Origin: Diplonema japonicum
Taxonomy: Eukaryota > Protista > Euglenozoa: Diplonemea
Length of the DNA: 64,000 bases
Assembly (NCBI GenBank): GCA_964019335.1
Contig: OZ025691.1
Span: forward strand, 62,001 to 126,000
Direction of reading: 5' to 3'
Shown here: positions 14,001-60,332 of the stretch, one piece after another
Layout: every line of letters starts with the position of its first letter
Position numbering within the stretch: the first letter of the stretch is position 1
Position numbers and translations under genes: made by a program
Notes under the pieces: model-generated
The model's database searches: none
The model's input: only the letters and a program-made list of their open reading frames with translations
What the model was told of the DNA's origin: nothing

Positions 14001-15026
14001 TAATGTTTGCAGTCAATCAAAAGATGCAAGAGGTACGGGAGAGAGAAGAGAAAAAAAAAAAGAGAAAAAAAACTAGGTCTACACCCATTATATCACAATG
14101 GTACTGCTGAAGATGATGTCCTCGCACGACATATCAGTATGGCTTATGACACGAAACAGATGTTTAAAAACATTTTTTTGACACAGTTTACGGACGATCA
14201 GGATCAAACGGAGCTTGTGCAGTTTGTGAAGAAGTGCAAGGATGCCATGACGAGGGCGGTGGCAGACCCCAAGGCGGCGCAGGAGTTCAAGCAACTTAAG
14301 ACGACGCTCAGCAAAAAGACACAACGAGTGGAAACTGTGGTTCTGAAAAAGATCCTTGAGACTCACAAAGACAGCACTTTCATGGAGTACAAGCCCGTGT
14401 TGCTGGGGATGCTTGAAAATGCTCGGTTCGAAGCGAGTATGAAGAAGGCATTCAACGACTGTTTGGAGTCCGACACGGGTGAGCTCCATGTGCGTGACGT
14501 GCAAAAGCGGGCAATGGCAGCGCCTCAGAAAATGATAGGAGACCAACCTTGGCCACAACAATGCGTGACGTGTGGAGTGCTTCTTAGTGAGAAGGTGGAA
14601 TCGACACTGGCGTTTGCCTGTGGACACACTCACCACATGTCGTGTCTGTCAGGATCTGAGAAATGCACTGTGTGCTTTGGGAAATCTGAATGCTGCGAAA
14701 GCAAAGAAGTGAAAAAGGACACCTCGGCCCAACCCACGAAAAAACACAACGCCAAGTACAAAGCAGCCAGCATCAAAAAGCTCAACAACAGACTCGGCCA
14801 CTCGGAGATCAACATCGACCTTCTGCATGGCGACATCGACATTGCATACGGATCCTCCGCCCTCTCCCTTGCTCCAGCACCCCCTCTCTTAGAAAGTGAC
14901 GAAGAAGACGACGAAAGCGACCAGAATGACGACACCTCTGAAGAGTTCGAGGACGATGCGTCCATCGATGAGCTCATGCTGGACGCTGTCCCCTTCCACG
15001 AGAACGACTACTTCTTATTTCCTTGA
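8085..15026 (+). CDS. VPS8: CORVET subunit Vps8-like (beta-propeller, alpha-solenoid, C-terminal RING-H2) with LamG-like insert
   Basis: WD-like N-terminal region, solenoid, RING CVTC..FACGHTHHMSCL..CTVC. Inferred introns 13697-13744 (in-frame, uncertain), 13763-13801, 13878-13915, 14033-14076, 14137-14186 restore one frame. Confidence 0.75.
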
Positions 15027-15103
15027 CATCAACGTGACTCAGGAAAATTTCCTCAAAAATAGAAGTTAGAAAAAGTAACCTTTCGCTTTTAGCTTAAAAA
15101 AAG

Positions 15104-15175
15104 GGGCTCAGCAGGGAATCGAACCCTGGACCTCTCGCACCCAAAGCGAGAATCATGCCACTAGACCACTAAGCC
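15104..15175 (-). tRNA. tRNA-Pro(TGG)
   Basis: GGCTTAG/CTGAGCC acceptor stem, CTCGC-TTTGGGT-GCGAG anticodon arm, GGTTCGATTCC T-loop, T7 terminator at 15096-15102. Confidence 0.97.
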
Positions 15176-15527
15176 GGTTCCCTCAAAAAACCGGGGTTTA
15201 TTTTTCTCCTTAAGCCTCAAAACGGCAGACTAAAGAAAACCGTGTTTTGCTTTTTTCCTTGAGTTTCAGCGTCTGCTGTGGCTCCTTCTTGGCCCTCTTG
15301 TTAGGCTCCTTCTTGTTGCGGAATGACGGTCGCCACCCCTGGAGTCTGTCTTAGAACGACTGCTTTCTTGCCTTGCCCGGCGGAGGGTGTCACCGTCGTG
15401 ACTTCCTCCGAGTCTTCTCGTCCGCCATGGTCCACTGGGAGTACAATACACCACCCCTCATGTGTTGCGGCCTCTTGCCGTTCAATGGGCTTCAGACACT
15501 CATTTAAGTTTATATATTTTATATAAT

Positions 15528-16283
15528 ATGGGTCCAGTACATTCTTTAGCAGTGGACGCCGTGCTGTCGGTCTGGGTTGGATTTACGAAGAAGCAGGATG
15601 GATCGGTGTTATACGTGAAGAGAGACGGCAGCAGCAGAGTGGTGTCAAAAGAAGAAATGAAAAGCTTGAAACTACAAGCGGGGAAGAAGCGCATTGTGTG
15701 CATCTCTGACACACACGGGTATCACAAGAACCTAGATCTGCCGGGAGGTGATTTATTAGTTTTGGCTGGTGATGTATTGCTTATCAGCAGGTACCAGCCG
15801 GAGTCTGCTTGCCGGGGAAAGATCAGGGAACTTGGTGATTGGTTGCGAAAACAACCATGCAAAGATAAATTAATTGTTGGAGGCAATCACGACTTGCCGT
15901 TTGAGAGCTTCGGGAAAAAGAAGACGGCAGACCTCCTTGGTCCTGGAGTGACTTATGCTGACCACGAGAAGCTCACTATTCAGGGGCTGAACATTTTCGC
16001 GTCGCCCCGGTCTTTCGGAAAATCTAAAAACATCGCTTTCCAAGGCAGGAGAGACCCCTTCCACGACGTGCCCTCTGACATAGACATCCTTGTCACGCAT
16101 CATCCTGCCCGTGATGATTATATGGAGACCCTTCTCAAAAGAACTGCGCCTCGGCTCCACGTTGGAGGTCACTACCACTGGATGCACGGTGCAAGTACTT
16201 TTAAATCTACCTTGTCTGTTACCGCTAGCATTCTCAACGAGAAATACAAGCCCACACAGCTTCCTATTGTCGTTGATCTCTAA
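15528..16283 (+). CDS. Calcineurin-like metallophosphoesterase (MPPED/239FB-like)
   Basis: CISDTHG, LAGD, GGNHD, ILVTH, GHYH motifs. Confidence 0.9.
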   Translation: MGPVHSLAVDAVLSVWVGFTKKQDGSVLYVKRDGSSRVVSKEEMKSLKLQAGKKRIVCISDTHGYHKNLDLPGGDLLVLAGDVLLISRYQPESACRGKIRELGDWLRKQPCKDKLIVGGNHDLPFESFGKKKTADLLGPGVTYADHEKLTIQGLNIFASPRSFGKSKNIAFQGRRDPFHDVPSDIDILVTHHPARDDYMETLLKRTAPRLHVGGHYHWMHGASTFKSTLSVTASILNEKYKPTQLPIVVDL

Positions 16284-16485
16284 GCTGCTTCATCCCTCCC
16301 TTCAGCTTAGCCCTTTTCTTCTTCTTTTTTTTCTTTCTTTTTTTCTTCTTTCCTTCACTTCTCAGACTAGCCTCTTTGAGATGCATTACCTGCAATTTTG
16401 TATTCTATATCTATCCCCCCCCCCCCCATTGAGTAACGCACACAAGACACAGCAAAAAGAAAGAGAAAAGAAACACACATACAGC

Positions 16486-17477
16486 ATGCCGCGCCTTGAT
16501 GACCTGATCGTCGACTGGGTGAAGACGGCGTCAATCCCGAAGGACGACAAGCTAACACTGTTGAGCTTCAGTGAGGTTGGGGTGAACAACTTGGAAGTAG
16601 TGACAGAGAGGGACATGGAACCCACCAGGAACGAGATCAGGGGCCTTGTGTACAAACTGAGCAGCAAGGCAGGACCCAAGCCCATCAGGGATGACCCAAG
16701 CCACGTCATGCCGAGTGTAGGATCGGGGTCATTCGTAGGCGACATGGAGGTAAACAACTCGAGAGAACACGGTAAGGAAATTGTGCAGAATGCGATAAAG
16801 GCGGGTTTCAGAATGATCGACTGCGCGAGGTACTACGAGAACGAGGAGTGCATCGGGGAAGGCATTGCGGAGCTAATGGAGGAAGGTGTTGTAAGGAGGA
16901 GTGATTTGTTCATCACCACGAAGGTAGCGCACCCAAACAAAGGCGACTATTCGGAAAGCGGGTTTATGATGGATCCTGAAGAAGACGCCACAGAAGGCGT
17001 TATGGCACAGGTGAGAAGCAGTGTTAAAAACCTTGGTGTAGAGTGCATCGATTTAGTGCTGCTACACTGGCCGTCGGACTTTGACATGAAAAATGAAGAC
17101 ATCGCGGCTAAGAAACGTGCGGAGATGTGGCAGGGCCTTGAACTTGCAAAAGAAGAGGGCCTCTGCAGGTCCATTGGTCTTTCAAACTTCACCATCCCCC
17201 ACTACGAGGGGCTCATCCAGAGCGGGGTTGCGTACCTCCCTGCCGTGAACCAAATAGAAGTCCACCCGTACCTCCCGAACTCCGAGTTGGTTGAAGCCAG
17301 TCAGGCAAAGGGGATGACAGTGATGGGCTACTGCCCTCTTGGTTCCTCCGCCTGCCTGAAATCCCCCCAGATCATCAAACTGGCAGAAGAGTTTGATGTG
17401 ACCCCCGCACAAGTCATCCTCAGCTGGATTGCTCAAAGAGGCGTAGTTCCCATTCCAAGATCCACCAACCCCGAAGT

Positions 17478-17527
<50 letters not shown>

Positions 17528-18053: not shown

Positions 18054-19118
18054 ATGAGCAGGCGGCCAAGCAAGACGCCGGCGGGGAAGAAAGGAAAGAA
18101 GAGCAAAGAGGAAATAGAAAAGCAGATGAAGGAGGAAGACGAAAGACTTGCGATGGAGGAGCTAATGATACTCGAGAGGGAAGCAGAGGACAAGATGCGG
18201 ATGGAATGCGAGACACGAGACAAAATGGAAGCGATGGAGATGAAAAGGCGAAAAAAAGAACACGCCGCTATGATCCTTGCAGAAAAGGAGAAATGCATAC
18301 TGGTACTATCTGCACAAATGAACGATCAGGTGAAGTTATACGCACAGGCTAGATCGGAACTGGAAGATGAGTTAAACCACGTTACGTCTTTGAAAGAAGA
18401 ATTGGCGAATTCCCTGTCGTCGTTGGAAGCAGAGACGAAAATCACGATTGGGGAACTTGAAGACAGCAATCGAAATTTGATTTCTGAGAACAAATCCAGG
18501 ACATCGGAACTTTCTTCTATCACAGCTGAACGCGACACACTGGCCATTGAGCTCGAGACCCGCACCGCAACACTAAGAAGACAGATAACAGTCGTGGAGG
18601 AAAAACTCGAGCAGACACAAACGTACAAAGACGAACGGTGTACAGAGTACACGTCAAAAATCAAAAACCTGGAAAGGGAGCTGGAAAAGACGGTCGCCCT
18701 GAACCGAACCCTGCAGGAGGTCATAGACAACAGAGAAGCCGATGACAAGAAGAACATAATGCTGATGCAGCTTCTTAACAACCAGCTCGACGAAAATAAG
18801 AAGCGAGCCCACCAGTCCCTCGAAGCCGAGAAGGAAAAATGCAGGGAACTCCAATCGAGGCTCTCCCAGCTGGAACTGTCGCAGACGCAACTTGTCGATG
18901 AAACATCAGTGTTGAAAAGGGACAAGGAACACGTTCTGCGACAAGTCGAAAAAGACCTCTTAGAGTACAAGTCCAAGCTGGAACAAGTCAAATTCGACGC
19001 GAGATTCGTTCACCACGAGCTTAGCAAATACAAAACGAAACTGGAACACCAACAAAGTGATTTCAAAAAGGCTACCAAGGACAGCGGTGAGACCGCAGAC
19101 AGAATGAAGGTAAAAGCG

Positions 19119-19169
<51 letters not shown>

Positions 19170-19909
19170 AGACCGATTTAGAAGCTGCCCAGCAGAAAAT
19201 CGAGGATCTAGAAGCCGTGATGAGGAAGAAGGACAGGGACCATTTCGACAAGGTGACGTTCCTGAACGCGCAGATCAGCAACAACAGAACTATAATATCG
19301 CAGCTGCAGATGAAGTTCAAGAAGGAGAAGGAAGCGAGGCTGAACGAGGTGGCCGCGTTGAACAATGAACTCTCGAACAAGAACCAGAGACTGTCCGCAG
19401 CACAGAACGATTTGGACAAGAAGAAAGTGCAGGCGAACGACGTAGAGGGCAAGCTGCAGAGCGACGTTGCGATATTGAAGACAACAGTGTTCCAACTCCA
19501 GAGCGCGTTGGTCGAGAAGGAAAGGGAGATGGAAACACTGATCTCAGACAAGGAAGACGAGGTCAGAAGGCTCCGCAAGAAGCTCGACGAGAATTTCATC
19601 CCCCACCGCCGAGAGGTCGACGGTACCGAGTCGTCGACAAAACCCCTTGAGCAAGCTCTTTCCGAAAAGATCCAAACCCTGACAAGGGACCTTGAGATCA
19701 AGTCTCGTGCTTCTTTAGACACCGAAACCCGTTTGAACGCCCAAATTGCTTCCACGAACCAAGTAGTCGAGTCGCTTCAGCTTGAGCTCAAAGCCAAAGA
19801 GGACCAGTACGGTGAGACGGTCAAGACGCTCGCCACGGAGAACTCTCGGCTCAAATCCACCCTCGAAGAGACTTTCGTTCCGAACCCGGAACATGAAATG
19901 AACGAATGA
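18054..19909 (+). CDS. Long coiled-coil protein
   Basis: Two ORFs joined in frame by poly(A) intron 19110-19171 (RMK|TDLEAAQQK). Confidence 0.85.
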
Positions 19910-24170: not shown

Positions 24171-24308
24171 GTTAGGTTAGGAGTGTGAGAATAAAAGGGA
24201 GAGCCTACCTTGGCCAGTCCTCCCCCTCCCTCTTCAAGTACCGGCTTTGTGCTTTGATAATCTTGTGGGTGAAAAGTTAAAACTGTCATTTTTTTTTTCC
24301 CCCGAGAA

Positions 24309-24340
<32 letters not shown>

Positions 24341-24371
24341 AAAAAAAAAAAACAGGGGCAAAACCCATTCG

Positions 24372-24409
<38 letters not shown>

Positions 24410-25118
24410 AGCAATATAAGAAAAAAAGAAGAAACAGCTGCCACTGACGGATGCAGTTATTCTTAAAAAAAAAGACTTTTTTTTTTGTGGGCGGGGGTGG
24501 GATGTGAAGTGTAAAATATGTGTGAATTTTTTTTTTCTCCCTGGTTGTCTTTAGCGCTCGTGGCTAGAGGCTTGTGGCGCAGTTCAGGAAGGATCACAGT
24601 GGGGTCTGTGTTGTAAACATCAACCCGCTTTTTTTTTGCATCTCAGAGTGCAGAACACGGTGGATGGGTGGTACGGAGTCCCATTTTCTCAAACACACTT
24701 CAGCATGGTCTCACTGAACATATCGATTTAGATAATTTGTACTTTTGCTAAAAAGAGTAGTGGTAGCACAAACAAAAAAAAGGGAAAAACCTCTGCTAAG
24801 GTCGGCAACGAAAGTGTGGTTCGCTTTTATTTTATTTTATAGTATTTATTCACCATTGAATTCCCAAGGAAAATGTTGGATTTCGCTCTCTCTAGAATCT
24901 TCTTATTTTTTTACGCCTCACATCTCTTGAGGTTTAGAAGATTGTTTTTTTTTTTTTTTTGGGAGGGAACGGGGAGGGACAAACGAAACACGTAAGTTTC
25001 GCCAAAACCAGTCACAAAAAAAAAGGGTTTTTTTTTTTTTTTGTTTTCTTCTTATGTGTGAACCATTCCCCTCCTTCCCTATCGTGGAAAGATTACTGAA
25101 AGATTGGAGAAGGAAAAG

Positions 25119-25150
<32 letters not shown>

Positions 25151-26079
25151 ATTTTGAAGTTGATCACACGACCCTCTCAGCGCCTTCAGGCCTGCCCTAG
25201 ATGTTTTCCTTTTCCGCCGTCAGCAACCGCGGTGCTGGGCTCCTCTTTATAAGTAGGTGAAGGGGTTTTTTTTTCCCCTTAAAGTCCAAAATTCACTTAA
25301 TACCCAAAATGAGCTTAATAGCTATGAAAACACAAGGGAAACTTGAAGACAAACAACAACAAAACAAAAACCCTGGTTTGCGTTTTTATCCTCTTGCAGT
25401 TTTGATGCAAAGATATATGGGCAATCTAACGCTCAGAATTAAAAAAAAGTCGCGCAATAGGGCCCCTCTTTTTAAAGAGTACTAAAAATGCCTTGCAGAA
25501 TTAAAAAATAAGTTTTTTTTTAGACTGATAGATCAACTCCGGTCCTTTATGGGTAAGTGAATTGCTCCCTTTTTTCTTTTCTTCTTTTTTTTTTTTTACT
25601 GTTTGTTTCTCCTTCCCCCCGCTTTTTTTGAGAGTATATTACCTTTGCTGCGGAACTTACCGCCCCCCATCAGGGGGGGTTTTTCTTTTAAAAATACTTT
25701 TTTCGCCTTTTATTCCCACTTGCAATATCATTTCAGTCACCAGGGTTGTCATGGCTAAAAACTTTAAAAAAATTGTAAAACCGAAACGGTTTCCGTATCC
25801 GTTTCCTTATTTGGAAGAGAAACGCGTTTCCCTTGTTAAAGAAACAGCCCCCCCCAAAAAAAATAGGGAAACGTTTCCTTATTTTCAAAAAAAAGAAGAG
25901 AAAAAAAAAAAAAAAAAAAGCTTGGAAACGCGTTTCCTTACCAACATAGCTGGGGGACACGAAAAATGGTAAAATCAGAACCCGAGTCCCCCCCCCTTTT
26001 TTTTTCTTTCTTGTACTGAAAGCCGGGAGTGGTGCCAAGGCAGCAACAAAAAAAAAGGGGGGTGGAAGAACAATAAAAA

Positions 26080-26859: not shown

Positions 26860-27085
26860 GGGAGAAAAAAAAGGAAAAAAAGAAGAGGGAAAAAAAAAAA
26901 AAAAAAAAAAAAAATGTCTTGTACCCCCATCTCCCTCCCACGCCATTCCCCATTATTGTACTGCCCCACACCCAAAAAGGGGGGGGGGGGGGGGGGGGGC
27001 TTTGTTGTTCTGATTTTACCTTTATGTTACGTGGTTTTTTTTTTTCTTTTCTTTTTCTTTTTTTTTTTTTACCATTTGTGTTTCT

Positions 27086-27119
<34 letters not shown>

Positions 27120-27200: not shown

Positions 27201-29601
27201 ATGGAGGGCGGGTTACTTGAGAGCTTTTGCCATGTAGTGGGGTTTGCCATTGATGAGGCAAAGACGAGCACTGTGGTTCGGGGCGAAGAAGGGACCAGCG
27301 AGGTGGTTGAGCTAGGCGGCTACGAGGATTGCAGCTGCGTGAAGGTTGTGGTGGACCTAGGGCTGGGGACCTTCGACATGACGTGGTCAACAGTACTCAG
27401 CCCAGGGGAGGTGAAACAGATCTCCAGAGGGTTCCATGGAATGCAGGTCAGCACTAAGTACGCAACGTTTGGAGAAGCCCTGGGCATGATCTCTGAGAAG
27501 GTAATCGTGGACGCAGAGAGCAAAGCAACCTTCATCAAGCAGACAGGGACATCTAACTTCGTCAAGAATTCACTCCACCTCACGCACAGCGTGGTGTCGT
27601 GCCATCTGAAGGACAGCGCCAAGAAGCTACTCACACGGAAATCGCTTCAAAGAACGATGACGAACCTGCGCCATCCTAGCATCTCTCTATCCCTTGATGT
27701 ACGCCACAGTGTCCATTGCTGTGGTGGAGTCATCCGCCGCCGTCCGGGACACCAAAACGGAATGCTGCTCAGCAACGGTCCAGGGCTCCTCCCTGGCACC
27801 CCCGATCCTTTCCACAAACTGCAACAAGTTGCGTCGCCGAAGGACAACTCCTCCTGCACCGACAACCCAGCATCTCCCGAGTACATCGGTGCCGCCATGG
27901 GCATGCAGTGGCGTCTCGGTACTCGGAAAACAACAAAAACAGCGCTGGCCAAGAAGCGGCTGGATGACGACGTCCTCCTCGCGAAGTCCCTCCAGCAGCA
28001 GTTCGACGAGGAGGTCGGCGAGACGCTTCCCGAGACAGACCCTCGGTGCTCCCTCTGTCAGACGACCATCCCCTTCGACGGCAGCATAGCATCCATCCCC
28101 TCCTGCGACATCTGCACACTGTACTGCTGCGTCAGGTGTTTCACGGGCCACCTTCAAGCCGAGGCTGTCAAGGCTACCAACGGAGGGAAGCCTTCCAGCA
28201 CCATACCATGCTTCAACCCAAGATGCCGTGCAACGGTTTGCCAGGCGGACCTGCGGCGGTACTTGACAGACGGGCAGCTCTCGACGCTCGACACGAACGA
28301 CTTGACAGCAGCGATCAAAACAGGGAAGAACGAGTACGTGAAGTGCCCGAAGTGTCTTCTGCTCATCGAATGCGACCCGTCAAACCAGAAGATGGAACTG
28401 CAGAACATGAAGCGGAGGGCGCAGAACGGGGCGGTGGAGCTGGACGGGGTGGAGATGTGCCTTGTGAAGGCGAACCACTACGTGAAGTACAGGATGAGGT
28501 GTCTGGGGTGCAGCAGCGTGTTCTGCACGTCGTGCTTCAAGACCCCGTACCATCTGGGGCAGACCTGCGAGGAGGCCTCGAACCCCTTGCACTGCAGGTT
28601 CTGCGACTCAGCACTAGCGAAGGCACCGCAGGTCGCATCATGGTGGAGACGGAAGAAGAAGCCTCACATGATGCTGGAAATATGCGGAGACAACGAATGC
28701 CAAGAGAAGGCAAGCGAGACATGTTTGAAGCAGCATTCCTGTGGGCATGCTTGCAACGGCATTTTAGATGAACGAACCTGCCCACCGTGCCTCCACGAGG
28801 ACTGCCATGCCGAGGGGCCGAGTGGTGACGAGTTCTGTTCCATCTGCTGGACAGAACCTCTCTCTGGTGCACCGATGATACAGCTCGCCTGCGGACACCT
28901 CGTCCACCATGCGTGCACCATCAGAAAGCTTGAAGCAGGGTGGCCAACCTCTCGCATCACCTTTTCATTCATGACATGTCCCTTGTGCAGTACCGACATC
29001 GAGCACCCAAGTCCGGCCGTGCAAAAGCTCCTCACCCCTCTTAAAAAACTCAAAAAAGACCTGCAAAAACGATGGATGGACAGACTTCGAATCGAAGGCC
29101 TTCTCGGCTCCGCAAGGCTGACCCAGAAGGGGGAACGCTTTTACCAGAAACCAATGGACTTCGCCCAGCATGTGTTGTGTTACTACAAATGCATCAAATG
29201 CTCGAAACCATATTTCGGTGGCGTGCAGCAATGCAATGTAGAGGAAGAGGCCAACCGGCAGTTCAAAAGGGAGGAGTTGATATGTGGTGCATGCGTGGAC
29301 AAAACTTCCTGTGCTGTGCATGGGACAGAGTACATACAATTCAAGTGTAGATATTGCTGCAAACCCGCCGTTTGGTTTTGCTGGGGTATGCTAGACAAGG
29401 GGAGGGGGAAAAAAAAATCTAGGTACAACTCACTTCTGTGATAAGTGCCACCGCGTGCTCCCTCGGCCTATACCACAGTGCAAGGGTGCTGATACCTGCC
29501 CTTCAGGAGTGGACCATCCTCCCAATGGGCAAGAATATGCGCTAGGATGTGTGGCCTGTATAGCGATAAAAAGGGGGGAGCCCCCTATAACTGCCCCTTA
29601 G
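27201..29601 (+). CDS. E3 ubiquitin ligase: RING/IBR-like fingers + MYCBP2-type RING-tandem-cysteine (RCR) module
   Basis: CSICWTEPL..CGHLVH..WPTSRITF..CPLC, YFGG..C, FKCRYCC..WFCWG|TTHFC..HPPNGQEYALGC after removing intron 29386-29422. Confidence 0.88.
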
Positions 29602-31568: not shown

Positions 31569-31599
<31 letters not shown>

Positions 31600-32049: not shown

Positions 32050-32152
32050 ACTTCTTTTTTTTGTTTCTGACAGGTACCAAACTTTTTTCTTTTTATATTT
32101 CATTTACACAGAAAAGAAAAAAAAGAAAAGAGGGGAATAATATAAAAAAAAA
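32050..32152 (+). promoter_or_regulatory. Representative putative trans-splice acceptor (polypyrimidine tract, AG at 32111, purine-rich leader); similar at 22109, 40519, 41402, 48049, 60482
   Basis: Recurrent polyY-AG-(A/G)n-ATG architecture upstream of genes. Confidence 0.6.
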
Positions 32153-33445: not shown

Positions 33446-33489
<44 letters not shown>

Positions 33490-33583: not shown

Positions 33584-33618
<35 letters not shown>

Positions 33619-35326: not shown

Positions 35327-35589
35327 ATGGAGGCAATCCAAGCACCACAGGTCCCAGTCAAATCAAAGAGAAGACGAGCTCCTGCAATGTCCCTTACATC
35401 GCTGCACCTTGAAGGGGACCTGCCACCGTTTTTCACATTCGTGGTAGAGATGAAACTAGCAGCGTGCGGGGAATTCGATCCTGACAAAATAGGCGAACAA
35501 CTGGTCAACTTGTCCAAGCGGCAGGTGGGGGGGGTCATTTCGCTGACGGAAAAGTGCGTGCAAGCAGAAATATTCGAACAGAGGTTTTT

Positions 35590-35629
<40 letters not shown>

Positions 35630-35953
35630 CACAGCTCGATCAAGCTCCTGCACCTTCCTACAGAAGACCTGACACCCCCCTCTCTTAACGATCTGATCAG
35701 AGGCGTAAATTTTATAAAAGAGGTCAACGATACCTCTAAAGCTGTTGTCGTGCACTGCGCCAAGGGCATCGGGAGGACCGGCACCATGCTGGGGGCGTAC
35801 TTTATCGTGCAAGACCGAATGCCTGCCTTCAAAGCAATCGAATGTGTTAGAGAGAGACGGCCTGGTTCCATTCACAAAAAGGCACAAGAAGCGATGCTGT
35901 ACGAGCTGGAAGCAGAAGTTCTTGGTCAGAGTTCAAAACCAGCTGAATTCTGA
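35327..35953 (+). CDS. Dual-specificity protein phosphatase
   Basis: VVHCAKGIGRTG CX5R motif, RRPGSI; poly(A) intron 35584-35634. Confidence 0.92.
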
Positions 35954-48089: not shown

Positions 48090-51000
48090 ATGGCAAAAGT
48101 CCTTGCAGTTGATACGAGAGTCTTTTACCGGCACAGTGAAAGGAGTTGGGAGTCGGGAATCGTGATCGGGTGTGAAGAAACGGCAAAGGGTTTGAAATAT
48201 TCCGTGAAAGCAGCCCCACCATTCGAAGAAATCCAAGACGGCGTGCCTCAGTACGATGTGCACAGGCAGCTCGACGGTGTTCTCGACGCGAAACCAGACG
48301 ACCTGCTACAACTGAGCGAGCTCCACGTCTCCGTCCTGCTTTCCGTCCTGAGAAACCGCTTCAAAGAAGACAACATCTACACAAACATCGGGAGCTTGAT
48401 CATCGCAGTCAACCCTTTCAAATGGTCCATCCCATGGTACAAGCCCGAGAAGGGCGTTGAGTACATCGACGAAGGTTGGAAAGGCGCTCCCTTGAATCGA
48501 TCAGGCCTCCGTCCCCACTCATGGGCAGTTGCGAACAAGTCATACTGGGACATGATAACACAAGGAAATCAAAGCATCCTCATCAGCGGTGAAAGCGGAG
48601 CCGGGAAAACAGAAGGCGCGAAGATCATTTTGAGATATCTAGGCGACCTGTGTGTTCGTCTCCTCGAAAAGGACAACGGTTCCGAGGCGGAGAAGAAGGC
48701 CGTGCACGACGTCAACGAGAAGCTGCAGACGGCCTCGCCCATCTTAGAGTCCTTCGGGAACGCCAAGACAACACGGAACGACAACTCCTCCCGGTTCGGA
48801 AAGTTCATGAAAATGCAGTTCAACTCAAAAGGCATCCTCGTTGGAATGGATGTCACGCCGTACCTGCTCGAAAAAAGCAGAGTCGTCAAGGCAGGTCCCG
48901 AAGAACGACTGTACCACTCTTTCTACCAGCTTGTCTTTGGAGCCACTCCGGAACAAAAAGAGAAATACCTCCTTGAAGACGCAAAGACATACAAATCTTT
49001 GAAAGCAGGCGGGTGCTTGACCATCCCAAAGGTAAACGACGCGGAGGATTACCAAGAGGTTCTGCGTGCAATGGATACCGTTGGGTTCAGTTCCGAGGAG
49101 GTCGACGCTTGCTGGAGGGTTGTCGCAGCGTGTTTACATTTATCATGCGTGGAGTTCACGGAGAATGAGAACGCACATTCGAAGGTTGAGGACGCAGTGC
49201 CAGTTCAAAAGGCAGCTGCAATGCTGCAGGTCAACGCAGAGGAGTTACAAAAAGGGCTCGTCACAAAAACATTGCGCTCGAGCAGGGACGTGAACATCAT
49301 CCCGTTGAACAAGAGCCAGGCGAGCGACACACGGAACTCGCTGTGCATGTTCATCTATGAGAAGAATTTTTTGAGATTGGTCGACAAGATCAACGATGTT
49401 GTCAGCAAGCCTGAGCAAGAGGACCGTTGGATCGGCCTCCTCGACATCTTCGGGTTCGAAAACTTCGAGACCAACTCTTTCGAGCAGCTGTGCATCAACC
49501 TCGCCAACGAACGCCTTCAAAAACACTACAACACGTACGTCTATGACAAGGACCTTCAAGAGTGCCGCGAAGAGGGCATCAAGAACGCCACGGAAGGCGT
49601 CGTTGTCAACGACAACAAACCCTGCCTCGACCTCATCATGGGTGCAAAAGACAGCATTCTTTCGATCTTAGATGATCGGTGCAAGTCCACTCAAAAGGGT
49701 GACCTCAAAGATGATCAAAAATTCCTCGATATCATGATAGAAACCTTTGGAGGGGAGAAACGAGATAAGGGCACGAAACGGAATGCGGAAGGACAGGTCA
49801 TTGTGAAGCGGGAGAACCCCGCCGACTTCTTCGAGTACGACCCAAGGAAGCCGACAGAGTTCGCAGTCCACCACTACGCGGGAAAGGTTCGGTACGACTA
49901 CGCGGGTTTCGTGAACAAAAACATCGACCTCCTCTCGGACCAGATCAAGCAAGTTATCAGGGAATCCGAAAGCGAGCTCATAGCAACCCTCATGCCCTCC
50001 GCACCGAAACCAGGCGAACGGACAACCCGTGTCACCGTCAGCGGTACCTTCAGGAGATCGTTGACGGAACTCATCGACACAATCCAATCAACGAAACCGA
50101 ACTGGGTCCGATGCATTCGCCCTAACCCACAGAAGGTCTCGGATCGCTTCCACACTGCGTCAGTTCTCGACCAGCTCACCTGCAGCGGTGTCGTCGAAAC
50201 AGTTAAAACAAGGCAGCAAGGATTCTGGTATCACAAAAAAAAAAAAAAAAAAAAAAAGGAGAAGAAAAAAAAAAAAAAACTCCACAGTTATCGCATGCCA
50301 TTCGAAGAATTCTCCTACCGCTACTCGGTTTGCGGAGACAAAACAGTCGTAGGGAACAGGCAACGTTGTTCCACCATCCTTATGGCTCTTAAGGTATATA
50401 TTGGGAAAAGAAGAGGGAAAAGGAAATCAAAATACACGAAGATCGACAAATCAGAGGGTCAAGTTGGAAAGACTAAAGTGTTCCTGAAGGTGAAAGCCCA
50501 CCAACACATAGAAGAGTCTCGAGAAGACAAGCTAAAGACGCACGTTGTGACGATGCAGACGCTGATCCGTTGGAGAGCTAGCAGGGTGGTCGTGATGGAC
50601 AGGAAGTACAGCGTCATGGGTCGCAGGGTACAGAAGTGGGTGAAGTTCGTTATGGCACGTGATGAGATGGTCAAGGAGCATTTCAGGAAGGTGTTGGGAC
50701 AGCTGTTGGTACAGCACAAGAAGGAACGAGAGGAGATGGTTAAGAAAGAGTTGACCAGCCGGCAAGAAACGACAAAAGAAGAAACCAGCGCACGGCTCGG
50801 TTTCAGCGCGGATCACAAAGAAGGTTTGCGCCCATTATGGGCAGCCGTACTAATACGCTGCCAGGGTGTCGAGGAAAAAGCCCGCGAAGATTTGTTTCTC
50901 GAAGAAGATGAAGAATTTGCATTGTTCAGCCCCGCGGCTAAAGAAGACCGGTCTATGTGCAAATCAAGACAAGACGAGCGCAAACGGCGAGAGAAACAAG

Positions 51001-52063: not shown

Positions 52064-53339
52064 ATGTCGGGACAGGACACCGATGGGGGGGAGCATCCAT
52101 GCCGCTGCAAGCGGTATATGGTGCAATTTAACAGACCGGGTTTCAGGGACCTGTATATTCAAGAGGTAATGGCAACAAATATACCCCCCTCCCCCTCCCC
52201 CCCTCCCCCCTTAACCTACACAACTTTTACAGTGTTTTGAAGTCCCTTCACGATACGAAATCGACGAAAAAGAAGCAGGGCTCGGTGTGGGTGCCTATGG
52301 TGCGGTGGTGAAAGCCTATGACACGGTCACAGGAAAGCACGTGGCGATAAAAAAATGGAAGGAGGTTTGTTTTTTTTTCTTTTCTTTTCTTCTCACCCCT
52401 CCCCTCACATTCTTTTCCAGCTCTTCGATCCTGGCCAGCCCCTGCGTACGAAGTCGAGTCTTCGGGAATTGAAGCTCCTCAGACACTTCTCGTCTTCCAC
52501 CCATCCACACCCTAATATCCTGCAAGCCCACGAGATCTTTATCCCCCTTGGCAACCCTGACGATAGCACCAAGTCGTACTTGGAACGGAGAAAAGAGTTC
52601 AACTCCGTCTACGTGGTACTCGACCTGTACTCCTTCAGTTTGAAACAGCTTTTGACAACCGCTGACCTTCAAAACCCGTTGGGGGAAGAATACCGGGGGT
52701 ACTTTATGTTCCAGCTCCTTCATGGGTTGAAGGCAATGTTTCGCGCGTCATGTGTGCACCGTGACCTGAAGCCGGAAAACATTCTCATAAACATTGAAGA
52801 TTCGAGTCTTTGTATCTGTGATCTCGGATCGGCTCGGGGATATGAAGCGGATATTGACACTGGCATCACCAACCTCTACTTCACCACCACGCAGTGGTAC
52901 AGCCCACCTGAATCGTTTTTAGAGTGTCTTCAAAACAAACCGGATCTGGAGACGCAGGTGATAATGCCCAACCCGCAGTCCGTCGACATCTGGGCGTGCG
53001 GGGTTATCCTTGCGGAGCTTATGCTCGGGGAACCGTTGCTTCCTGGGAAGGGCGAGGACCACATTGGGCAGCTCACCCTGATTTTCACCAAGGTGGCCCC
53101 TATCACAGAGGAAGACATCAACAAGCTGAATTTTAGGTCGAAAGAGGTACAGGAAAAGAAAAAAAAAAAAAATCACGACAAATACGACTCTTCTCCCCTC
53201 CCCCTCCCCTCTCCATAGTTGAAAAGGATAATGCTGGACATAAGCCGTGCAGGCCGAAGCGCCAACGTCAGAAAGTTGTTTGACGGAAAGCTTGACAAAG
53301 CGGGGAAGCCGTACTCGTCAAGGGAGTTGGGTATGGCAG

Positions 53340-53380
<41 letters not shown>

Positions 53381-53624
53381 AGATATGCTCGAGGCGATGC
53401 TCCAAATCGACCCTTGCAAACGTGTGACGATTGATGAGGCTTTGGAATTTCCTTATTTCGAGGACTTCCCGCCCCCTGAAGAGGAGGAGGAGCAGGACCC
53501 GGCAAAGTTTGAATTTCGGTTCGACGCCGACAGGGACGCACGGGAAGATATCTGGGAGGAATATGAGAAGGATAACAAAGAAGTCAAAGAATTTTTCGAC
53601 CGGCTCATCTTAAATAACAAGTAA
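52064..53624 (+). CDS. MAPK-like CMGC kinase
   Basis: GVGAYG, VAIKK, HRDLKPENIL, DLGSAR, QWYSPPE, DIWACG; introns 52166-52232, 52365-52420, 53147-53218, 53331-53382. Confidence 0.9.
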
Positions 53625-54830: not shown

Positions 54831-55200
54831 GCACAAACGTTCAGGGAGTGTTCACGTGTGGCGGGGAGCCCAATTAACGTTCACCCCCTATTTTTATTTT
54901 TATTTTGAAAAAAAAGGGTCAAAAAATCGGCCAAAAAAGTAACCCATTTTGAACCGGGGGCCCTGTTTTTATATATATTTTTTAAAGAGAAAAATAAAAG
55001 AAGAAGACAAACATGTTTCCGTGATCTTTTATATAATCCCCCCCCCCCCCCCCCCCGCATCCAGCCTTTCTTTTTTTTTATTTTTTATTTTTTTTTTTTT
55101 TTTTACCTTTTTGCTTGAGTGTGTGGTGCGTTATTTTTTCAAATAACCCTGCCCCCCCCCCATTTTTTTCTCAGACAAAAAAAAAGTAAATAGAAGCAAA

Positions 55201-55830: not shown

Positions 55831-56336
55831 AAGAAAAAATCTTTTCTTAAAACAAACTGCTCTCCTTTTTAAAAAAAGAACCCCCCCCCCCCCGATACCG
55901 TCCTCTGCATGTCCTTTTTCCTTGTTACAAAAAAAAATGATTTTATTACTGTATGAAAGTTGTTGCCGAGCAAAAGAAAAAAAAAAAAAAAAAAAAAAAA
56001 AAAGAGAGAACAACAAAGACATATAGTCATGAATAATCTTTTTTTTTTATATATTTATTTTTAAAAAATTTACACGTACGTGCAAAGTGACAAAAGCCAC
56101 AGGTGTTTAAGGTGGTTCAAAAAAAAAAGAGGAAACTATAGTTTAAAGATATCCTCCTCCCCCCCTCCCCCCCTTCCTCCTCTTATAAATTGGTACGAGT
56201 AAATCGTTTAGTTGTATGCTTACTTTCTTCTTCCGACGACCTTTCTCCCCCCCCCCCCCCATTTTTGAAGCATCATTTCTTTGAATACTGGTAAATACAA
56301 CAGGCGGAGGTGGAGAGGGGGACGGTCCCCTGAAAA

Positions 56337-58378
56337 ATGCCGGAAAGCTTAAAGGAAACCATCACAAAACTCACCGCAAACCGAGAGGAACAAGGGGAAG
56401 ATGTACGGTTCAACAAAGAGACAGTTTTGGCGAAGCTGTCGAAGGAACAGAGAGAAGAAGGCTTGGTGAAGCTCAAAGGCATCGAGATCAGCATGGGAGG
56501 AAAAGGCCTAGTAGGAGACGGGCTAGAAACATGCACAGCACTCCGCTCAATAGACCTATCAGGGAATAGGTTGGAAGGTTTTCGAGACACGACAAAACTA
56601 AAGGGTGTAAAAGAATTCATCCTGGACAAAAACGCAATAAAGGACTTGAAAGGGGTCGCTCAATACACCCAGTTGCAGCATCTGAGCTTAGCAGACAACC
56701 TCTTAACGGTGCTCCCAAAGGAGCTGAACTATCTAACCAGCTTGAAGTCTTTAAACGTGGAGGGAAACCAGATCGAAAAAATCACAGTGAAACTTATCTT
56801 GCCCCAGCTAACCGTCTTCAACGCTTCGAGAAACAGGTTGGAACAAATTGGAGCCGAAGTAGCTTTCCCGAAGCTCACCGAGTTGAAGCTGTCCCACAAC
56901 AATATAAACACATTTTCCGGGGTTCAAAAATTCACGTCTCTAGAAGAGCTGGACCTGGCTTACAATAATTTATCTGAGAGCTCATCAGACGCTTACGCGA
57001 ACAGGAGGGCGGCGGTGGCAATGGCTCCATTGAGAATGTGTCAAAACCTGGTTTCGCTGAATGTTCGGTGTAATAAGTTGACAAGTTTGTCGTTCTTACC
57101 CACGCTTCCGCATTTGACAGACTTGCTGTTGGGGGAGAACAATCTTGGAAAGGCTGAACTTGAACTTAAGCAGCTTGAAATCGAAAGTACAGAATCGCAT
57201 TCCATCTTCACAGACATCGACGAATCTTGCTATGGATCCGAAGATGAAGGCATCCCTGTAAAGCCCACCGTCTTTGTGAAACGGAAGAGTTCTGTTGCCA
57301 GCACCGTTGTGTCTAAGGCGTCCAGTACAGCGAGGCGGAACGCCGCAAAAACCATCTCCGACCACTGCCCTGCCTTGGAGGTTCTTGACGTGTCTTCTAA
57401 CCCTTTCCTTTTCCCGACGTACGCCCACCTCGCTCCCTTGCAGCGGTGCAAAACCCTTGCTGATCTCCGCTGCACCGGTTCCTTCCACTCGCAAACCGAC
57501 GCTACTCACAAGAACGGTGTGTACGCGGCTCTCCCTTCTCTTGAGGTCATCGACGGTTATTCTGTGGTCAAGGTCAACAGGATTGAGATCGAGGACCTTG
57601 AAACAGATCAAGACGGGGAGAAGAAGATCACGGAGGTTGCTTTTAAGAAGGAATCGGTGTGTTTGGAGAAAAAAAAAAAAAAAAAAAAAAAAAACAGTCA
57701 TTCGGCATCCCCACTGCTGGGGCATGGTCTGCACCAGGCCTGCGGCCCTCCACAGCTTGCTCAGACCGGCCCACGACGTCTTCTGGTAAAAAAAAAAAAA
57801 ATAAATAAATAAAATAAAATAAAATAAAAAAAACAAAACAGGCCGGCCTTTAATGCGGCCGATCAGTTCCTGCAGCAGCATGTGGTCTGGTGTGTCGTGG
57901 GTGGGGTCTGAAGCTCGGGACGAGGTGACGGACACAATGGCCCGCCTCAAGGAGATGAAGGAGAAGGCGTCGCAGCGGGTTGCGACCCTGAAGGAGGCCC
58001 TCGAGATGCTGCCCGACAAGGTTGCTGACATCAAGTCTGCAGCAGAGAACATTGAGGACCTCCTGGAGGGCGGGGGGCAGATGAGCAGAAGCTCATCCCC
58101 GCGGCCACCTTCAACACCCACACCGCCTGCCGGGCAGATCAGGTACAGGAAGGGGTCCACCGACAGTGTGACCACGACACCTCTTTCCAGCAAACCGTTG
58201 AAATCTACACCGACAGGGAAACCGAGGACGAAGTACTACCATCTGCAGAAAAGGAACAATTTTCAAGGAAAAGCGGGGCTTAGCTTTGCCGAAGAGGCAA
58301 AGCTCGCGAAGACCCGGGCCACGGTGGAGGAGGAGTTGGACAAACGCCTGCTCCACCACCATGTGCAGATGATGCAAG

Positions 58379-58458
<80 letters not shown>

Positions 58459-59021
58459 CGCTCGAAGAAGAAGCGGCCTTCTGGAGAATCGATCGGGACC
58501 CAAGCAGGAGGGGGCACAGCGCCCCCCGCCGTCACGGTGCCTCCTCTGCGCAAGCTTCCCACGAAGGAAACTGCGTCCACAGCTTGCTCGCCTATAAAAA
58601 CCGCAGATGGCGGAATGGAACCACTGGAGCTGTCGACGGTGGGGAACGCTGCAGCACCTACATATTCTTCATCTTCTGATGAGGACTCTGGAGACATGCC
58701 TATGACACCCCCGCCACCGCAAGATTTTTCGACAACAGTCGTTTCGGGGCTGGACACGAGGACTGCCGTGTCGTCATTCAATGTTTTTACGGCTACCGAC
58801 ACTCCTGCTGCAGTTGCGCGGACGAAGTTTAAGAGCCCTCCAAAAACCCGTGTTCCTGGAGACATGAAACCTGTGCTGAGGACTCCTAAAGCTTCTCCTG
58901 TTGACTTGTCGGAGACACTGCGCTCAAACGCCTCCTCTTCTTCGTCTTCGGCAACTTCGAAACAGGTTGCCGTTGGTTTAAAACGAAATTTGCAAAGGTT
59001 TGTGTTTGGAAGGGGAGAGAA

Positions 59022-59062
<41 letters not shown>

Positions 59063-59112
59063 GATCCGGGAACAGATCGTTGAATGCAAAAATGGTTTCA
59101 AGAAGACAATAA
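56337..59112 (+). CDS. Leucine-rich-repeat protein with low-complexity polyQ tail
   Basis: Multiple LxxLxLxxN repeats, LRR cap (LPSLEVIDG); A-rich introns 57657-57697, 57786-57841, 58998-59063 join the ORFs. Confidence 0.88.
58381..58458 (+). repeat. (CAA)26 coding microsatellite (polyQ)
   Basis: Perfect trinucleotide run. Confidence 0.97.
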
Positions 59113-59507
59113 GATAGAAAAAAAAAAAAGTCATGTTTGACAAAAAAAAGTTTTTTTTTGAGAAAAAAAAAAAAAAAGAAGAAGAATGGCCCTCGTTCTT
59201 TCCCCCTTTATGTTGATTCCCCCCCATTTTTTGATTGTTTTATGATTTCTGTTGATTACTTCCTTTTTTTTATCTCTCTTTTTCTCTCTCGTTCTCTTTT
59301 TTTTCTTTCTTCTTCTTTTTTTTTTTCTCTTCCTGTTTTCTTCCCTTTCATTCACTCCGTTTCTTATTCTTTATATGTTTGTTTATTTATTTATTTTTTT
59401 TTAAATTTTTTTTGGAAAACCATTTCACTGGTGCTGCCCAAAGGAAGGCCATCAAAAAAAAAGCCCAACAGACACGACAGAACAAAAAAAAAAAAAAAAA
59501 AAAAAAA

Positions 59508-60332
59508 ATGGATGAAATAGTGATTTTTAAAAACAAAACCCCTGCGCTTCTTGAATGTGTAGAAGCATTGTGCCGAATGTCAGGGGAGAGACTGAGTGGT
59601 TTCTGTTGCAGGGTACTGGAATTCATGGTGGAAGGGTATATATATATATATTTTTTTTTTCTTTTTTTTTTTTTTCTCGAAACATAAAAAAAAAGGCAAA
59701 AAAACATCAAACCCCTATTTTCCGAATCGGAAGAGAAATCCCTAGCAAAAAAATTAAAGAAGGAGAATGTTCAGGTAAATAACAAAAAAAAATAAAAGAA
59801 AAAAAAAGAAATAAAAAAAAAATAAAAGAGTGTCGTGGATGTAGTTGAATACATTTTCGAGCAATTCGCGTACCACTCGGTAACCAAGGACAGCATGGAA
59901 GCAGCCCTGAAGGACATAGGAGTGACAGAGGAGGGCGTCCAAAGTTTTATTGAAGCATGGGCAGCGGGTGGTATGCGGCAACACTGCGAAAAAAAAAAAG
60001 TACAAATAAAAAAAAAAAAAAAAAGGAAAATCATACCTGAATAAAGTCCGGAACCACACCCTCGGTGGCCCGCAGGTTCTGACAAACATCTCTTATGACA
60101 GCCAACTGGGAGTCTCGGACACAACAGGTTTGGGAAAAAAAGAGAAAAAAAAAAAAATAAATAAAGGCCCCAAACACGAACCGAACTCCGTGCTGCAACT
60201 GCACCTCGCGGAGGTTGAAGGGGGCGAGACCCTGGCTGAGGACACGGTATCGCTCCGGTTCACGCACGAGCAACTCTACGACTTTTTCAAGCAGATCGAC
60301 ACCATTCAAGGCCAGATCGACGGGATTGCAAA

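What the first reader, a model, noticed from the sequence alone, without database searches (positions are those of the whole stretch)
14033..60166. Short cis-spliced introns carry poly(A)/purine tracts instead of a polypyrimidine tract
Seen: at least 14 of ~25 inferred introns are GT-(A-tract or purine tract)-AG with no pyrimidine tract: 14033-14076, 17476-17523, 19110-19171, 29386-29422, 35584-35634, 50228-50287, 50394-50441, 53331-53382, 57657-57697, 57786-57841, 58998-59063, 59775-59828, 59971-60025, 60128-60166. Removing them restores conserved protein sequence (MAPK EL|DMLEAML, RCR FCWG|TTHFC, myosin GF|CYR, COMMD10). Established: U2AF65 normally reads a U-rich tract. Inference: this organism has an intron class recognised without a polyY tract, e.g. 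by short-intron definition, a poly(A)-binding factor or a divergent U2AF.
Basis: partly seen in the sequence, partly recalled or inferred. Interest (0 to 1): 0.9.

Follow-up and report, generated by a model that had tools for sequence, protein, structure and literature searches.

The report
Poly(A)-filled tiny introns of a diplonemid
These are real, very short GT-AG introns of a diplonemid protist whose inside is mostly a run of A's instead of the usual pyrimidine tract; the oddity is genuine, but it was already reported for Diplonema japonicum in 2025 and only its mechanism is still open.

Summary
All 14 segments are GT...AG, 37-66 nt, with an A- or purine-rich body and 0-25% pyrimidine in the last 20 nt. 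Assembled contigs of public runs, which behave as mRNA, skip five of them exactly and stop at the 5' site of a sixth. Five more are supported by reading frame or homology. Three are unverified (14033, 35584, 50394), and frame logic argues against 14033.

The genome is a 62.5-Mb spliced-leader euglenozoan with many cis introns, so a diplonemid. In 24 introns found without regard to composition, three figures match published Diplonema japonicum values: median length 42 nt, A 57% in the last 20 nt, and YTRAY in 3 of 24. Thakur et al. [quoted passage not shown]

The constant feature is a G-poor, A/C-rich 3' region. Poly(A) is its extreme: runs of 10 or more occur in 11 of 24. Poly(T)-filled and ordinary pyrimidine-tract introns coexist, even within one gene. 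U2 snRNA is canonical and a U2AF65 homologue is present.

My best reading is ordinary U2-type splicing of short introns that need only an AG-free spacer with a branch A.

The scan noted the same class on two other pieces of this genome.

The parts
14033..14076 (+). Claimed A-tract intron (44 nt). Intron status doubtful.
   Evidence: GT..AG and A-rich. No upstream frame with an ATG joins the long downstream ORF. Possibly a 5'UTR intron or an A-tract before a spliced-leader (SL) acceptor.
17476..17523 (+). A37 intron (48 nt, in frame) in the aldo-keto reductase gene.
   Evidence: The Pfam Aldo_ket_red match 14-265/291 ends at the last residue before it. No RNA evidence.
19110..19171 (+). A50 intron (62 nt).
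   Evidence: Removal joins open frames of 357 and 245 codons. The unspliced frame stops after 23 codons.
29386..29422 (+). Purine/A9 intron (37 nt) in the RING-finger gene.
   Evidence: Removal joins open frames of 750 and 58 codons. The unspliced frame stops after 18 codons.
35584..35634 (+). Claimed A36 intron (51 nt, in frame). Unverified.
   Evidence: GT..AG. It is in frame and stop-free, and has no homology or RNA support.
50228..50287 (+). A23+A15 intron (60 nt, in frame) in the myosin motor.
   Evidence: The alignment of exon 1 to solved myosins runs to its last residue (..QQGF). The Pfam myosin head match ends there.
50394..50441 (+). Claimed purine-rich intron (48 nt, in frame). Unverified.
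   Evidence: GT..AG. No independent support.
52365..52420 (+). Ordinary pyrimidine-tract intron (56 nt) in the kinase gene.
   Evidence: Pkinase profile positions 3-33 lie in the exon before it and 43-214 in the exon after it. Sequence. Pyrimidines make up 90% of the last 20 nt.
53147..53218 (+). Mixed intron (72 nt) in the kinase gene: A14 followed by a C/T tract.
   Evidence: Sequence. It joins a 275-codon frame to the next exon. Pyrimidines make up 95% of the last 20 nt.
53331..53382 (+). A39 intron (52 nt) in the kinase gene.
   Evidence: Frameshift rescued. The downstream exon reads as kinase subdomain XI.
57657..57697 (+). A26 intron (41 nt) in the LRR gene.
   Evidence: X7 and X8 contigs lack 97 nt between 57655 and 57847, equal to 41 + 56. 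A single ORF results after removal.
57786..57841 (+). A/T-A repeat intron (56 nt) in the LRR gene.
   Evidence: Same contig arithmetic and same single ORF.
58998..59063 (+). A38 intron (66 nt) in the LRR gene.
   Evidence: The ORF runs on to the stop at 59110 after removal.
59636..59695 (+). Extra intron (60 nt) in the COMMD gene: T10 and T14 runs, then A9 directly before the AG.
   Evidence: Needed to account for the 114 nt missing from the X1, X7 and X8 contigs between 59630 and 59834. Keeps a single ORF.
59775..59828 (+). A-rich intron (54 nt) in the COMMD gene.
   Evidence: Contig arithmetic. Single ORF. The COMM_HN profile continues in the next exon.
59971..60025 (+). A11+A17 intron (55 nt) in the COMMD gene.
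   Evidence: X1 record 5 has 10 letters where the genome has 65. X8 lacks 94 nt, equal to 55 + 39.
60128..60166 (+). A-rich intron (39 nt) in the COMMD gene.
   Evidence: Explicit GT..AG joint in X1, X7 and X8 (table 5). The COMM_domain match lies in the next exon.
55173..55174 (+). Inferred spliced-leader acceptor AG, with a T/C tract upstream.
56302..56303 (+). Inferred spliced-leader acceptor AG of the LRR gene.
   Evidence: The last 100 nt upstream are 68% pyrimidine.
59519..59520 (+). Inferred spliced-leader acceptor AG of the COMMD gene, preceded by an A25 run instead of a pyrimidine tract.
   Evidence: The last 100 nt upstream are 29% pyrimidine, and A25 ends 12 nt upstream.
60481..60482 (+). 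Inferred spliced-leader acceptor AG of the next gene.
   Evidence: A T16/CT tract lies upstream.

Best explanation
These are ordinary U2-type GT-AG spliceosomal introns of a diplonemid, probably Diplonema japonicum or a close relative. They are very short, with a median near 42 nt.

Inferred mechanism: in such short introns the two ends are recognised together (intron definition). The interior only has to be a short, unstructured stretch that is poor in G, and so free of AG, and that offers a branch adenosine. The first AG after this stretch is then used as the 3' splice site. A U-rich tract read by U2AF65 is not required.

Homopolymer runs, mostly A on the sense strand and less often T, are slippage-prone filler that meets these conditions. 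An A run can abut the AG because it supplies the branch A itself. A T run needs a short tail containing A in front of the AG.

Shown: the segments are removed from RNA; the composition figures; canonical U2 snRNA; a U2AF65 homologue is present.

Inferred: branch use inside the A run, independence from U2AF65, and growth of the runs by slippage.
For: - Splicing: contigs that behave as mRNA (run kinds are not on record) skip the segments at GT..AG, and single ORFs result.
- Unbiased sample: 24 introns were found through RNA contigs or through breaks in myosin and kinesin domains. Their median length is 42 nt. The last 20 nt are A57 C21 T17 G6, against 24% G in the window as a whole. G is absent from that stretch in 13 of 24. 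A runs of 10 or more occur in 11 of 24 and T runs of 10 or more in 3 of 24. YTRAY occurs in 3 of 24.
- In the claimed introns that carry an A run (all but 50394), the 3' AG is the first AG after the final A run, 0-8 nt away; earlier AGs lie upstream of or between the runs.
- In 20 genome-wide GTATG+T20 sites, 9-11 are short frame-compatible introns. In most of those (8 of the 11) the T run ends 11-25 nt before the AG and is followed by a tail containing A. In the A20 sites the run mostly abuts the AG.
- Genome-wide forward-strand counts: GTATG followed within 8 nt by A20 gives 245 sites and by T20 gives 122, against backwards controls of 50 and 45.
- Sense-strand bias: in the window, runs of 12 or more number A 12 to T 1 inside introns, but A 30 to T 47 outside them.
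- Slippage: paralogous introns at one position carry A9 in one copy and A4 in the other.
- Machinery: U2 snRNA is canonical, including GUAGUA. The U2AF65 homologue has the RRM1 motifs RLYVGN and FAFVE conserved.
- Coexistence: pyrimidine-tract and A-tract introns occur in one gene.
- Literature: Thakur et al. 2025 report the same A-rich 'PPT' and find U2AF1/2 in D. japonicum.
Against: - No branch point was mapped and no factor was tested.
- G-poverty of the last 20 nt partly follows from the way a 3' AG is chosen.
- The A-over-T bias (2:1 to 7:1) is not explained by a pure spacer model. It needs an added assumption, such as selection against U tracts that attract spliced-leader addition. One apparent SL acceptor (59520) itself sits behind an A25 run, which weakens that assumption and hints that A tracts may act positively.
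- RRM2 of U2AF65 has lost its RNP aromatic residues, so altered RNA specificity is possible.
- The share of A-run introns differs strongly between samples (0 of 8 in myosin paralogues, 5 of 7 in the two RNA-verified genes), and this is unexplained.
Confidence: 0.55

Rival explanations
1. The A tract is an active signal. A nuclear poly(A)-binding protein, or a U2AF65 with a remodelled RRM2, reads it in place of the pyrimidine tract and recruits U2 snRNP, at cis introns and perhaps also at some spliced-leader acceptors.
For: - Strong sense-strand A bias in introns (245 against 122).
- The runs abut the AG, where a pyrimidine tract would normally sit.
- The apparent SL acceptor at 59520 has A25 12 nt upstream and only 29% pyrimidine.
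- RNP1 and RNP2 of U2AF65 RRM2 lack the aromatic residues (KLVMSGF and KACCVFEF, against human KLFIGGL and KGYAFCEY).
Against: - Roughly half or more of an unbiased intron sample has no A run: 13 of 24 lack a run of 10 or more and 17 of 24 lack one of 12 or more. CA-rich, C-rich and T-run introns coexist, even within one gene.
- RRM1 of U2AF65 is conserved.
- Three of four SL acceptors have ordinary pyrimidine tracts.
- No binding factor has been identified.
Confidence: 0.2
2. The tracts are a DNA-level feature of all non-coding DNA of this genome, namely poly(dA:dT) runs made by replication slippage or kept to exclude nucleosomes. They sit in introns only because introns are non-coding, and they have no role in splicing.
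For: Ninety runs of 12 or more A or T lie in 64 kb, and 77 of them are outside the 17 introns. Both orientations occur in introns genome-wide. Run length differs between paralogous introns.
Against: A purely DNA-level process predicts equal A and T on the sense strand. Introns instead show 7:1 (unbiased sample), 12:1 (window) or 2:1, while intergenic DNA shows 30:47. The position of the run relative to the AG also differs between the A and T types.
Confidence: 0.15
3. The introns descend from insertions: poly(A)-tailed retrocopies made by the genome's non-LTR retrotransposons, or introner-like elements. On this view the A run is an old poly(A) tail.
For: The layout (a short unique 5' part, then an A run, then AG) resembles a retrocopy tail. 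A reverse-transcriptase/RNase H element with an A-rich 3' end lies in the window. Earlier notes of this scan report Ingi-like and SL-derived retroelements.
Against: There is no target-site duplication or flanking repeat: the mean longest shared word is 4.2 against 4.4 in mismatched controls. The introns share no sequence family beyond GTATG. T-run introns would need antisense insertion that still happens to have GT..AG ends.
Confidence: 0.07
4. Some of the in-frame segments (17476, 35584, 50228, 50394) are not introns but encode lysine-rich insertions, or the tracts are assembly artefacts.
For: AAA encodes Lys in every frame, so these four read through without a stop. The six-frame Pfam scan reads the myosin straight through. 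Homopolymer lengths from long-read assemblies are unreliable.
Against: Every A-tract segment covered by RNA contigs is removed, including the in-frame ones of 39, 54 and 66 nt. Myosin and aldo-keto reductase homology stops exactly at the junctions. Exact GT..AG ends.
Confidence: 0.05

Closest known systems
A-rich 'polypyrimidine tract' region of Diplonema japonicum introns (Thakur et al., RNA 2025, PMC12621601)
   Same: [quoted passage not shown] YTRAY is found in 13.9% of introns there and in 3 of 24 here. 5' site (G)/GTATG. U2AF1/2 and the snRNAs are present.
   Different: The paper gives logos only.
- exact anatomy, with the run abutting the AG;
- the G-poor continuum;
- poly(T)-filled siblings whose run lies upstream of a tail containing A;
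- coexistence with pyrimidine-tract introns in one gene;
- an A-tract in front of an apparent SL acceptor.
The species of this window was not identified directly.
Human short introns with truncated pyrimidine tracts spliced with SPF45/RBM17 instead of U2AF (Fukumura et al. 2021, PMC8363638)
   Same: Short introns (about 56 nt in the model substrate) that lack a usable pyrimidine tract are spliced by the major spliceosome without U2AF binding to a U tract.
   Different: The human introns are G-rich or have shortened tracts, not poly(A). Dependence on an SPF45-like factor was not tested here, and no homologue was sought.
Non-conventional introns of euglenids and hemistasiid diplonemids (PMC12621601, PMC12501133)
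   Same: The same phylum. Both depart from standard intron signals.
   Different: Those introns lack GT-AG and have base-paired ends. These keep GT-AG and a GTATG 5' site, and an A run cannot pair with the other end.
Homopolymer dA:dT-rich introns and intergenic DNA of AT-rich protists such as Plasmodium and Dictyostelium (own knowledge, not checked here)
   Same: Long A or T runs fill non-coding DNA, introns included.
   Different: This genome is about 48% G+C with sharply delimited runs. In its introns the runs show a sense-strand A bias and sit directly against the 3' AG.
Small Drosophila and fission-yeast introns with pyrimidine tracts between the 5' site and the branch point (own knowledge, e.g. 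Kennedy and Berget 1997; not checked here)
   Same: This resembles the poly(T)-filled introns seen here, where the T run lies upstream of the likely branch region rather than between branch and AG.
   Different: It is no precedent for poly(A) in that position.

Membership tests
U2-type GT-AG spliceosomal introns | GT at the 5' end and AG at the 3' end | tested here: met
   All 14 claimed segments, the 3 added ones and 24 of 24 in the unbiased sample.
U2-type GT-AG spliceosomal introns | Precise removal from mature RNA | tested here: met
   An explicit joint and contig arithmetic cover five of the claimed introns plus the added 59636-59695, and the 5' boundary of a further claimed intron (58998-59063) is also seen. 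There is no RNA evidence for the other 8 claimed.
U2-type GT-AG spliceosomal introns | Extended 5' site that fits U1/U6 (GTATG-like) | tested here: met
   The 24 unbiased introns start with GTATG-like pentamers (GTATG the commonest, then GTATA, GTGTG, GTTTG, GTAAA, whose tally used one start later corrected, and sequences).
U2-type GT-AG spliceosomal introns | Branch-site consensus (YTRAY / UACUAAC) | tested here: not met
   YTRAY occurs in only 3 of 24. The A-tract introns have none. Degenerate branch sites are normal in many eukaryotes, so this does not exclude membership.
U2-type GT-AG spliceosomal introns | Pyrimidine tract before the 3' AG | tested here: not met
   Pyrimidines make up 0-25% of the last 20 nt in the 14 claimed introns. 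Only 6 of 24 unbiased introns reach 60%.
U2-type GT-AG spliceosomal introns | Major-spliceosome machinery encoded in the genome | tested here: met
   At least 7 full-length canonical U2 snRNA copies. A U2AF65 homologue with RRM1, RRM2 and UHM. Other components are taken from the literature only.
U2-type GT-AG spliceosomal introns | Lariat formed at a branch adenosine | not testable with these tools
   The reads tool was used once and returned contigs, not raw reads.
Diplonema japonicum-type A-rich introns (Thakur et al. 2025) | A is the commonest base in the 20 nt before the 3' site; median length about 41 nt; few YTRAY; about 98% GT-AG | tested here: met
   A 57%, median 42 nt, YTRAY in 3 of 24, GT-AG in 24 of 24, set.
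Euglenid/hemistasiid non-conventional introns | No GT-AG ends; intron ends base-pair with each other | tested here: not met
   GT-AG is present throughout. Bodies of A cannot pair with the G-rich 5' parts. No folding was run.
Introner / transposon-derived introns | Target-site duplications, terminal repeats, and a sequence family shared between copies | tested here: not met
   No excess of repeats across the intron ends: 4.2 against 4.4 in controls. Nothing is shared beyond the splice-site motifs.
SPF45-dependent short introns | Splicing depends on SPF45 and not on the U2AF heterodimer | not testable with these tools
   Only the shortness and the missing tract are seen. Factor dependence needs experiments (for the precedent).

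The most novel reading that the evidence does not exclude
The sense-strand poly(A) tract is a true 3'-splice-site element. On this reading it is a purine-tract code, read by a dedicated factor or by a U2AF65 whose RRM2 has changed, which replaces the pyrimidine tract at cis introns and at some spliced-leader acceptors such as 59520. It would give this lineage two parallel ways of marking an AG.
Probability: 0.15. Interest if true: 0.8.

Novelty: already known. Interest (0 to 1): 0.4.

Why it matters
Text-book 3' splice-site recognition rests on U2AF65 reading a U-rich tract. A free-living eukaryote with a canonical U2 snRNA that removes thousands of 35-65-nt introns whose 3' half is poly(A) shows how dispensable that tract can be.

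It also offers a natural system for asking what defines a short intron. The same cell uses pyrimidine tracts for spliced-leader addition, so cis and trans 3' sites can be compared side by side.

The observation itself is published. What remains open is the mechanism: branch choice, the factor involved, and the cause of the A-over-T bias.

Tried and rejected
- Codon-usage segmentation of the window: the coding signal was too weak to call exons.
- Exhaustive search for ORF-joining GT..AG pairs: swamped by spurious ORFs, so no complete intron census of the window was possible.
- Naive pairing of the longest upstream and downstream frames: misleading where exons are short. It was replaced by walking whole gene models.
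- Pkinase scan as an unbiased source of introns: it returned only uninterrupted domains. Breaks in myosin and kinesin domains worked instead.
- Test for target-site duplication or tandem duplication at intron ends: negative.
- C12 and G12 runs after GTATG: near background. 'Homopolymers of any base' therefore means mainly A and T.
- SF1-HH Pfam scan of the genome: no hit, but the control genomes were silent too, so it is uninformative.
- Pfam and PDB searches with exons of 33-41 residues: mostly blank because the queries are too short.
- Naming the species from papers: no direct identification.
It was redone from coordinates and short anchors. An earlier script had run with such letters.
Exons were searched apart by reference, and the joined search step is left out.

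Full report
**What is in the sequence.** All fourteen segments begin with GT and end with AG. They are 37-66 nt long and consist mostly of A or purines on the + strand, with runs of up to 50 A. In positions -3 to -22 they hold 0-25% pyrimidine and 50-100% A. In the thirteen that carry an A run (all but 50394), the 3' AG is the first AG after the last A run, 0-8 nt away. Earlier AGs lie upstream of or between the runs.

**Are they spliced?** One reads call was available, and I laid four public runs on window:55000-60900. The data are assembled contigs, and the runs' kinds are not on record.
- Contigs of X7 and X8 match the window exactly. Contigs of X1 are 95-99% identical and come from another organism.
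- These contigs behave as mRNA. They begin at an AG, preceded by 17-33 letters that do not lie on the window, and they skip internal segments.
- Table 5 gives an explicit 39-nt GT..AG joint, equal to 60128-60166, in X1, X7 and X8.
- From the record coordinates in table 8, 55 nt are missing at 59971-60025.
- 97 nt are missing between 57655 and 57847, which is 41 + 56.
- 114 nt are missing between 59630 and 59834. That is the claimed 54-nt intron plus a further 60-nt intron, which I place at 59636-59695.
- X1 stops exactly at 58997.

With these segments removed, the LRR gene (ATG 56337 to the stop at 59110) and the COMMD gene (59520 to the stop at 60334) each become a single open frame. The COMM_HN and COMM_domain profiles fall in successive exons.

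**The eight segments without RNA evidence.**
- 19110, 29386 and 53331 rescue frameshifts between long open frames.
- 17476 and 50228 sit exactly where the aldo-keto reductase and myosin alignments stop.
- 35584 and 50394 are in frame and unverified.
- 14033 is not supported. No upstream frame with a start codon joins the long ORF.

Exons were searched apart.

**What organism.**
- An unlaid end in X1 carries the 3' part of a euglenozoan spliced leader. That text, followed by GT, occurs 160 times in the genome.
- The assembly is 62.5 Mb in 132 contigs. That excludes Paradiplonema papillatum, whose genome is 280 Mb.
- A euglenozoan that uses a spliced leader and has many cis introns is a diplonemid.
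- The intron statistics below match those published for Diplonema japonicum. The species name is an inference.

**Literature.** Thakur et al. (RNA 2025, PMC12621601) report several things for D. japonicum:
- a median intron length of 41 nt and 98% GT-AG;
- a (G)/GTATG 5' site;
- YTRAY in 13.9% of introns;
- U2AF1/2 present.

They give no mechanism. Two other first-stage notes of this scan describe the same introns on other pieces of this genome.

**How general, and is it a class?** I collected introns without regard to their composition: 7 from the RNA-covered genes, 8 from breaks in myosin-domain matches and 9 from breaks in kinesin-domain matches elsewhere in the genome. For these 24:
- the median length is 42 nt (range 32-67);
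- the last 20 nt are A57 C21 T17 G6, against about 24% G in the window;
- G is absent from that stretch in 13 of 24;
- A runs of 10 or more occur in 11, and of 12 or more in 7;
- T runs of 10 or more occur in 3;
- there are no C or G runs of 9 or more;
- YTRAY occurs in 3.

Many introns simply end in a CA-rich stretch. The constant property is therefore a G-poor, A/C-rich 3' region, and poly(A) is its extreme.

Ordinary pyrimidine-tract introns also exist. The kinase gene of this window has 52365-52420 (T/C tract) and 53147-53218 (A14 followed by a C/T tract) next to the A39 intron 53331-53382.

Genome-wide, GTATG followed within 8 nt by A20 occurs at 245 forward-strand sites, and by T20 at 122. 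The backwards controls give 50 and 45. C12 and G12 are near background.

I examined the first 20 sites of each kind. Of the A sites, 6-8 are short GT..AG units flanked by compatible open frames of at least 50 codons. Of the T sites, 9-11 are. In most of the T type (8 of the 11) the run ends 11-25 nt before the AG and is followed by a tail containing A. In the A type the run mostly abuts the AG.

**Strand bias.** The window holds 42 A runs and 48 T runs of 12 or more. Inside the 17 introns the ratio is 12:1. Outside them it is 30:47. The unbiased sample gives 7:1. A purely DNA-level origin does not explain this.

**Machinery.**
- U2 snRNA is canonical over its whole 5' half, including the GUAGUA branch-binding box. 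There is thus no U2 adaptation to poly(A).
- A U2AF65 homologue lies at C19:431190-434139, with RRM1, RRM2 and UHM. Its best solved relatives are human U2AF65 RRM2 and UHM.
- RRM1 keeps RLYVGN and FAFVE. RRM2 has lost the RNP aromatic residues.
- This gene itself contains A-rich introns.
- A scan for the SF1 helix-hairpin domain was uninformative.

**Trans-splicing for comparison.** Four contig starts coincide with AG (55174, 56303, 59520, 60482). Three have 68-78% pyrimidine in the 100 nt upstream. The fourth, 59520, has an A25 run ending 12 nt upstream and only 29% pyrimidine.

**Origin.** I found no target-site duplication or tandem duplication at the intron ends. Two tandem myosin paralogues carry A9 and A4 in the intron at the same position, which points to change in run length by slippage.

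**Reading.**
- The best-supported explanation (0.55) is ordinary U2-type splicing by intron definition. The interior need only be a short, AG-free, unstructured spacer that offers a branch A, and homopolymers are slippage-grown filler.
- The A-over-T bias and the A-tract acceptor keep alive the more novel reading (0.15-0.2) that the A tract is itself read by a factor.
- Branch points, factor dependence and exact run lengths were not testable here.

**Verdict.** The feature is real and striking, but it is already described. The value added here is the anatomy and the continuum. Interest 0.4.

Noticed in passing
window 60333-60379: The COMMD gene's TAA stop codon runs directly into a genomic A45 tract, so the 3'UTR would be almost nothing but encoded A's. 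Other genes in the window also have A runs shortly after their stops (55977-56003, 59118-59129).
   Followed up: no
The pyrimidine-rich DNA lies 100-290 nt further upstream.
   Followed up: partly
window 3439-6048 (- strand) and 3047-3225: An ORF with reverse-transcriptase and RNase H domains (non-LTR retrotransposon type) lies on the minus strand. Long T runs on the + strand lie just beyond its 3' end, which means an A-rich tail on its own strand.
   Followed up: no
window 58377-58459: A perfect (CAA)n repeat of about 83 nt lies inside the LRR gene's open frame and would encode poly-Gln. All run contigs break here.
   Followed up: no
window 24200-27100, 29500-32100, 33450-40400: These long stretches have low G+C (38-45%) and are packed with alternating A and T runs of 12-45 nt. 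They contain no convincing ORFs and separate the gene-dense blocks.
   Followed up: no
L002 1501-1693 and 2468-2772 (G000:C12): A U2 snRNA gene lies about 800 nt upstream of an SRP RNA gene. Near-identical U2 copies occur on at least 7 contigs.
   Followed up: no
L079 1483-1521 (G000:C1) and 160 sites genome-wide: The spliced-leader text followed by GT occurs 160 times, often near contig ends. The copy inspected continues GTGGTGGGG and then into what looks like unrelated sequence, so many copies may be SL-bearing retrocopies rather than SL RNA genes.
   Followed up: partly
L094 (reverse complement) 641-688 (G000:C83): A 48-nt kinesin intron is made almost wholly of consecutive homopolymers: A10, G6, A11, T11, then AAAG.
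   Followed up: no
L004 1516-2667 and L008 (G000:C19:431190-434139): In the U2AF65 homologue, the RNP1 and RNP2 motifs of RRM2 lack the usual aromatic residues, while RRM1 is conserved. The gene itself has an A-run intron before the RRM2 exon and an A/C-rich intron inside RRM1.
   Followed up: partly
window 8085-13781: A 1898-residue single-exon ORF has a Vps8 beta-propeller and TPR, with a concanavalin-like (Laminin_G_3) domain inserted between them.
   Followed up: no
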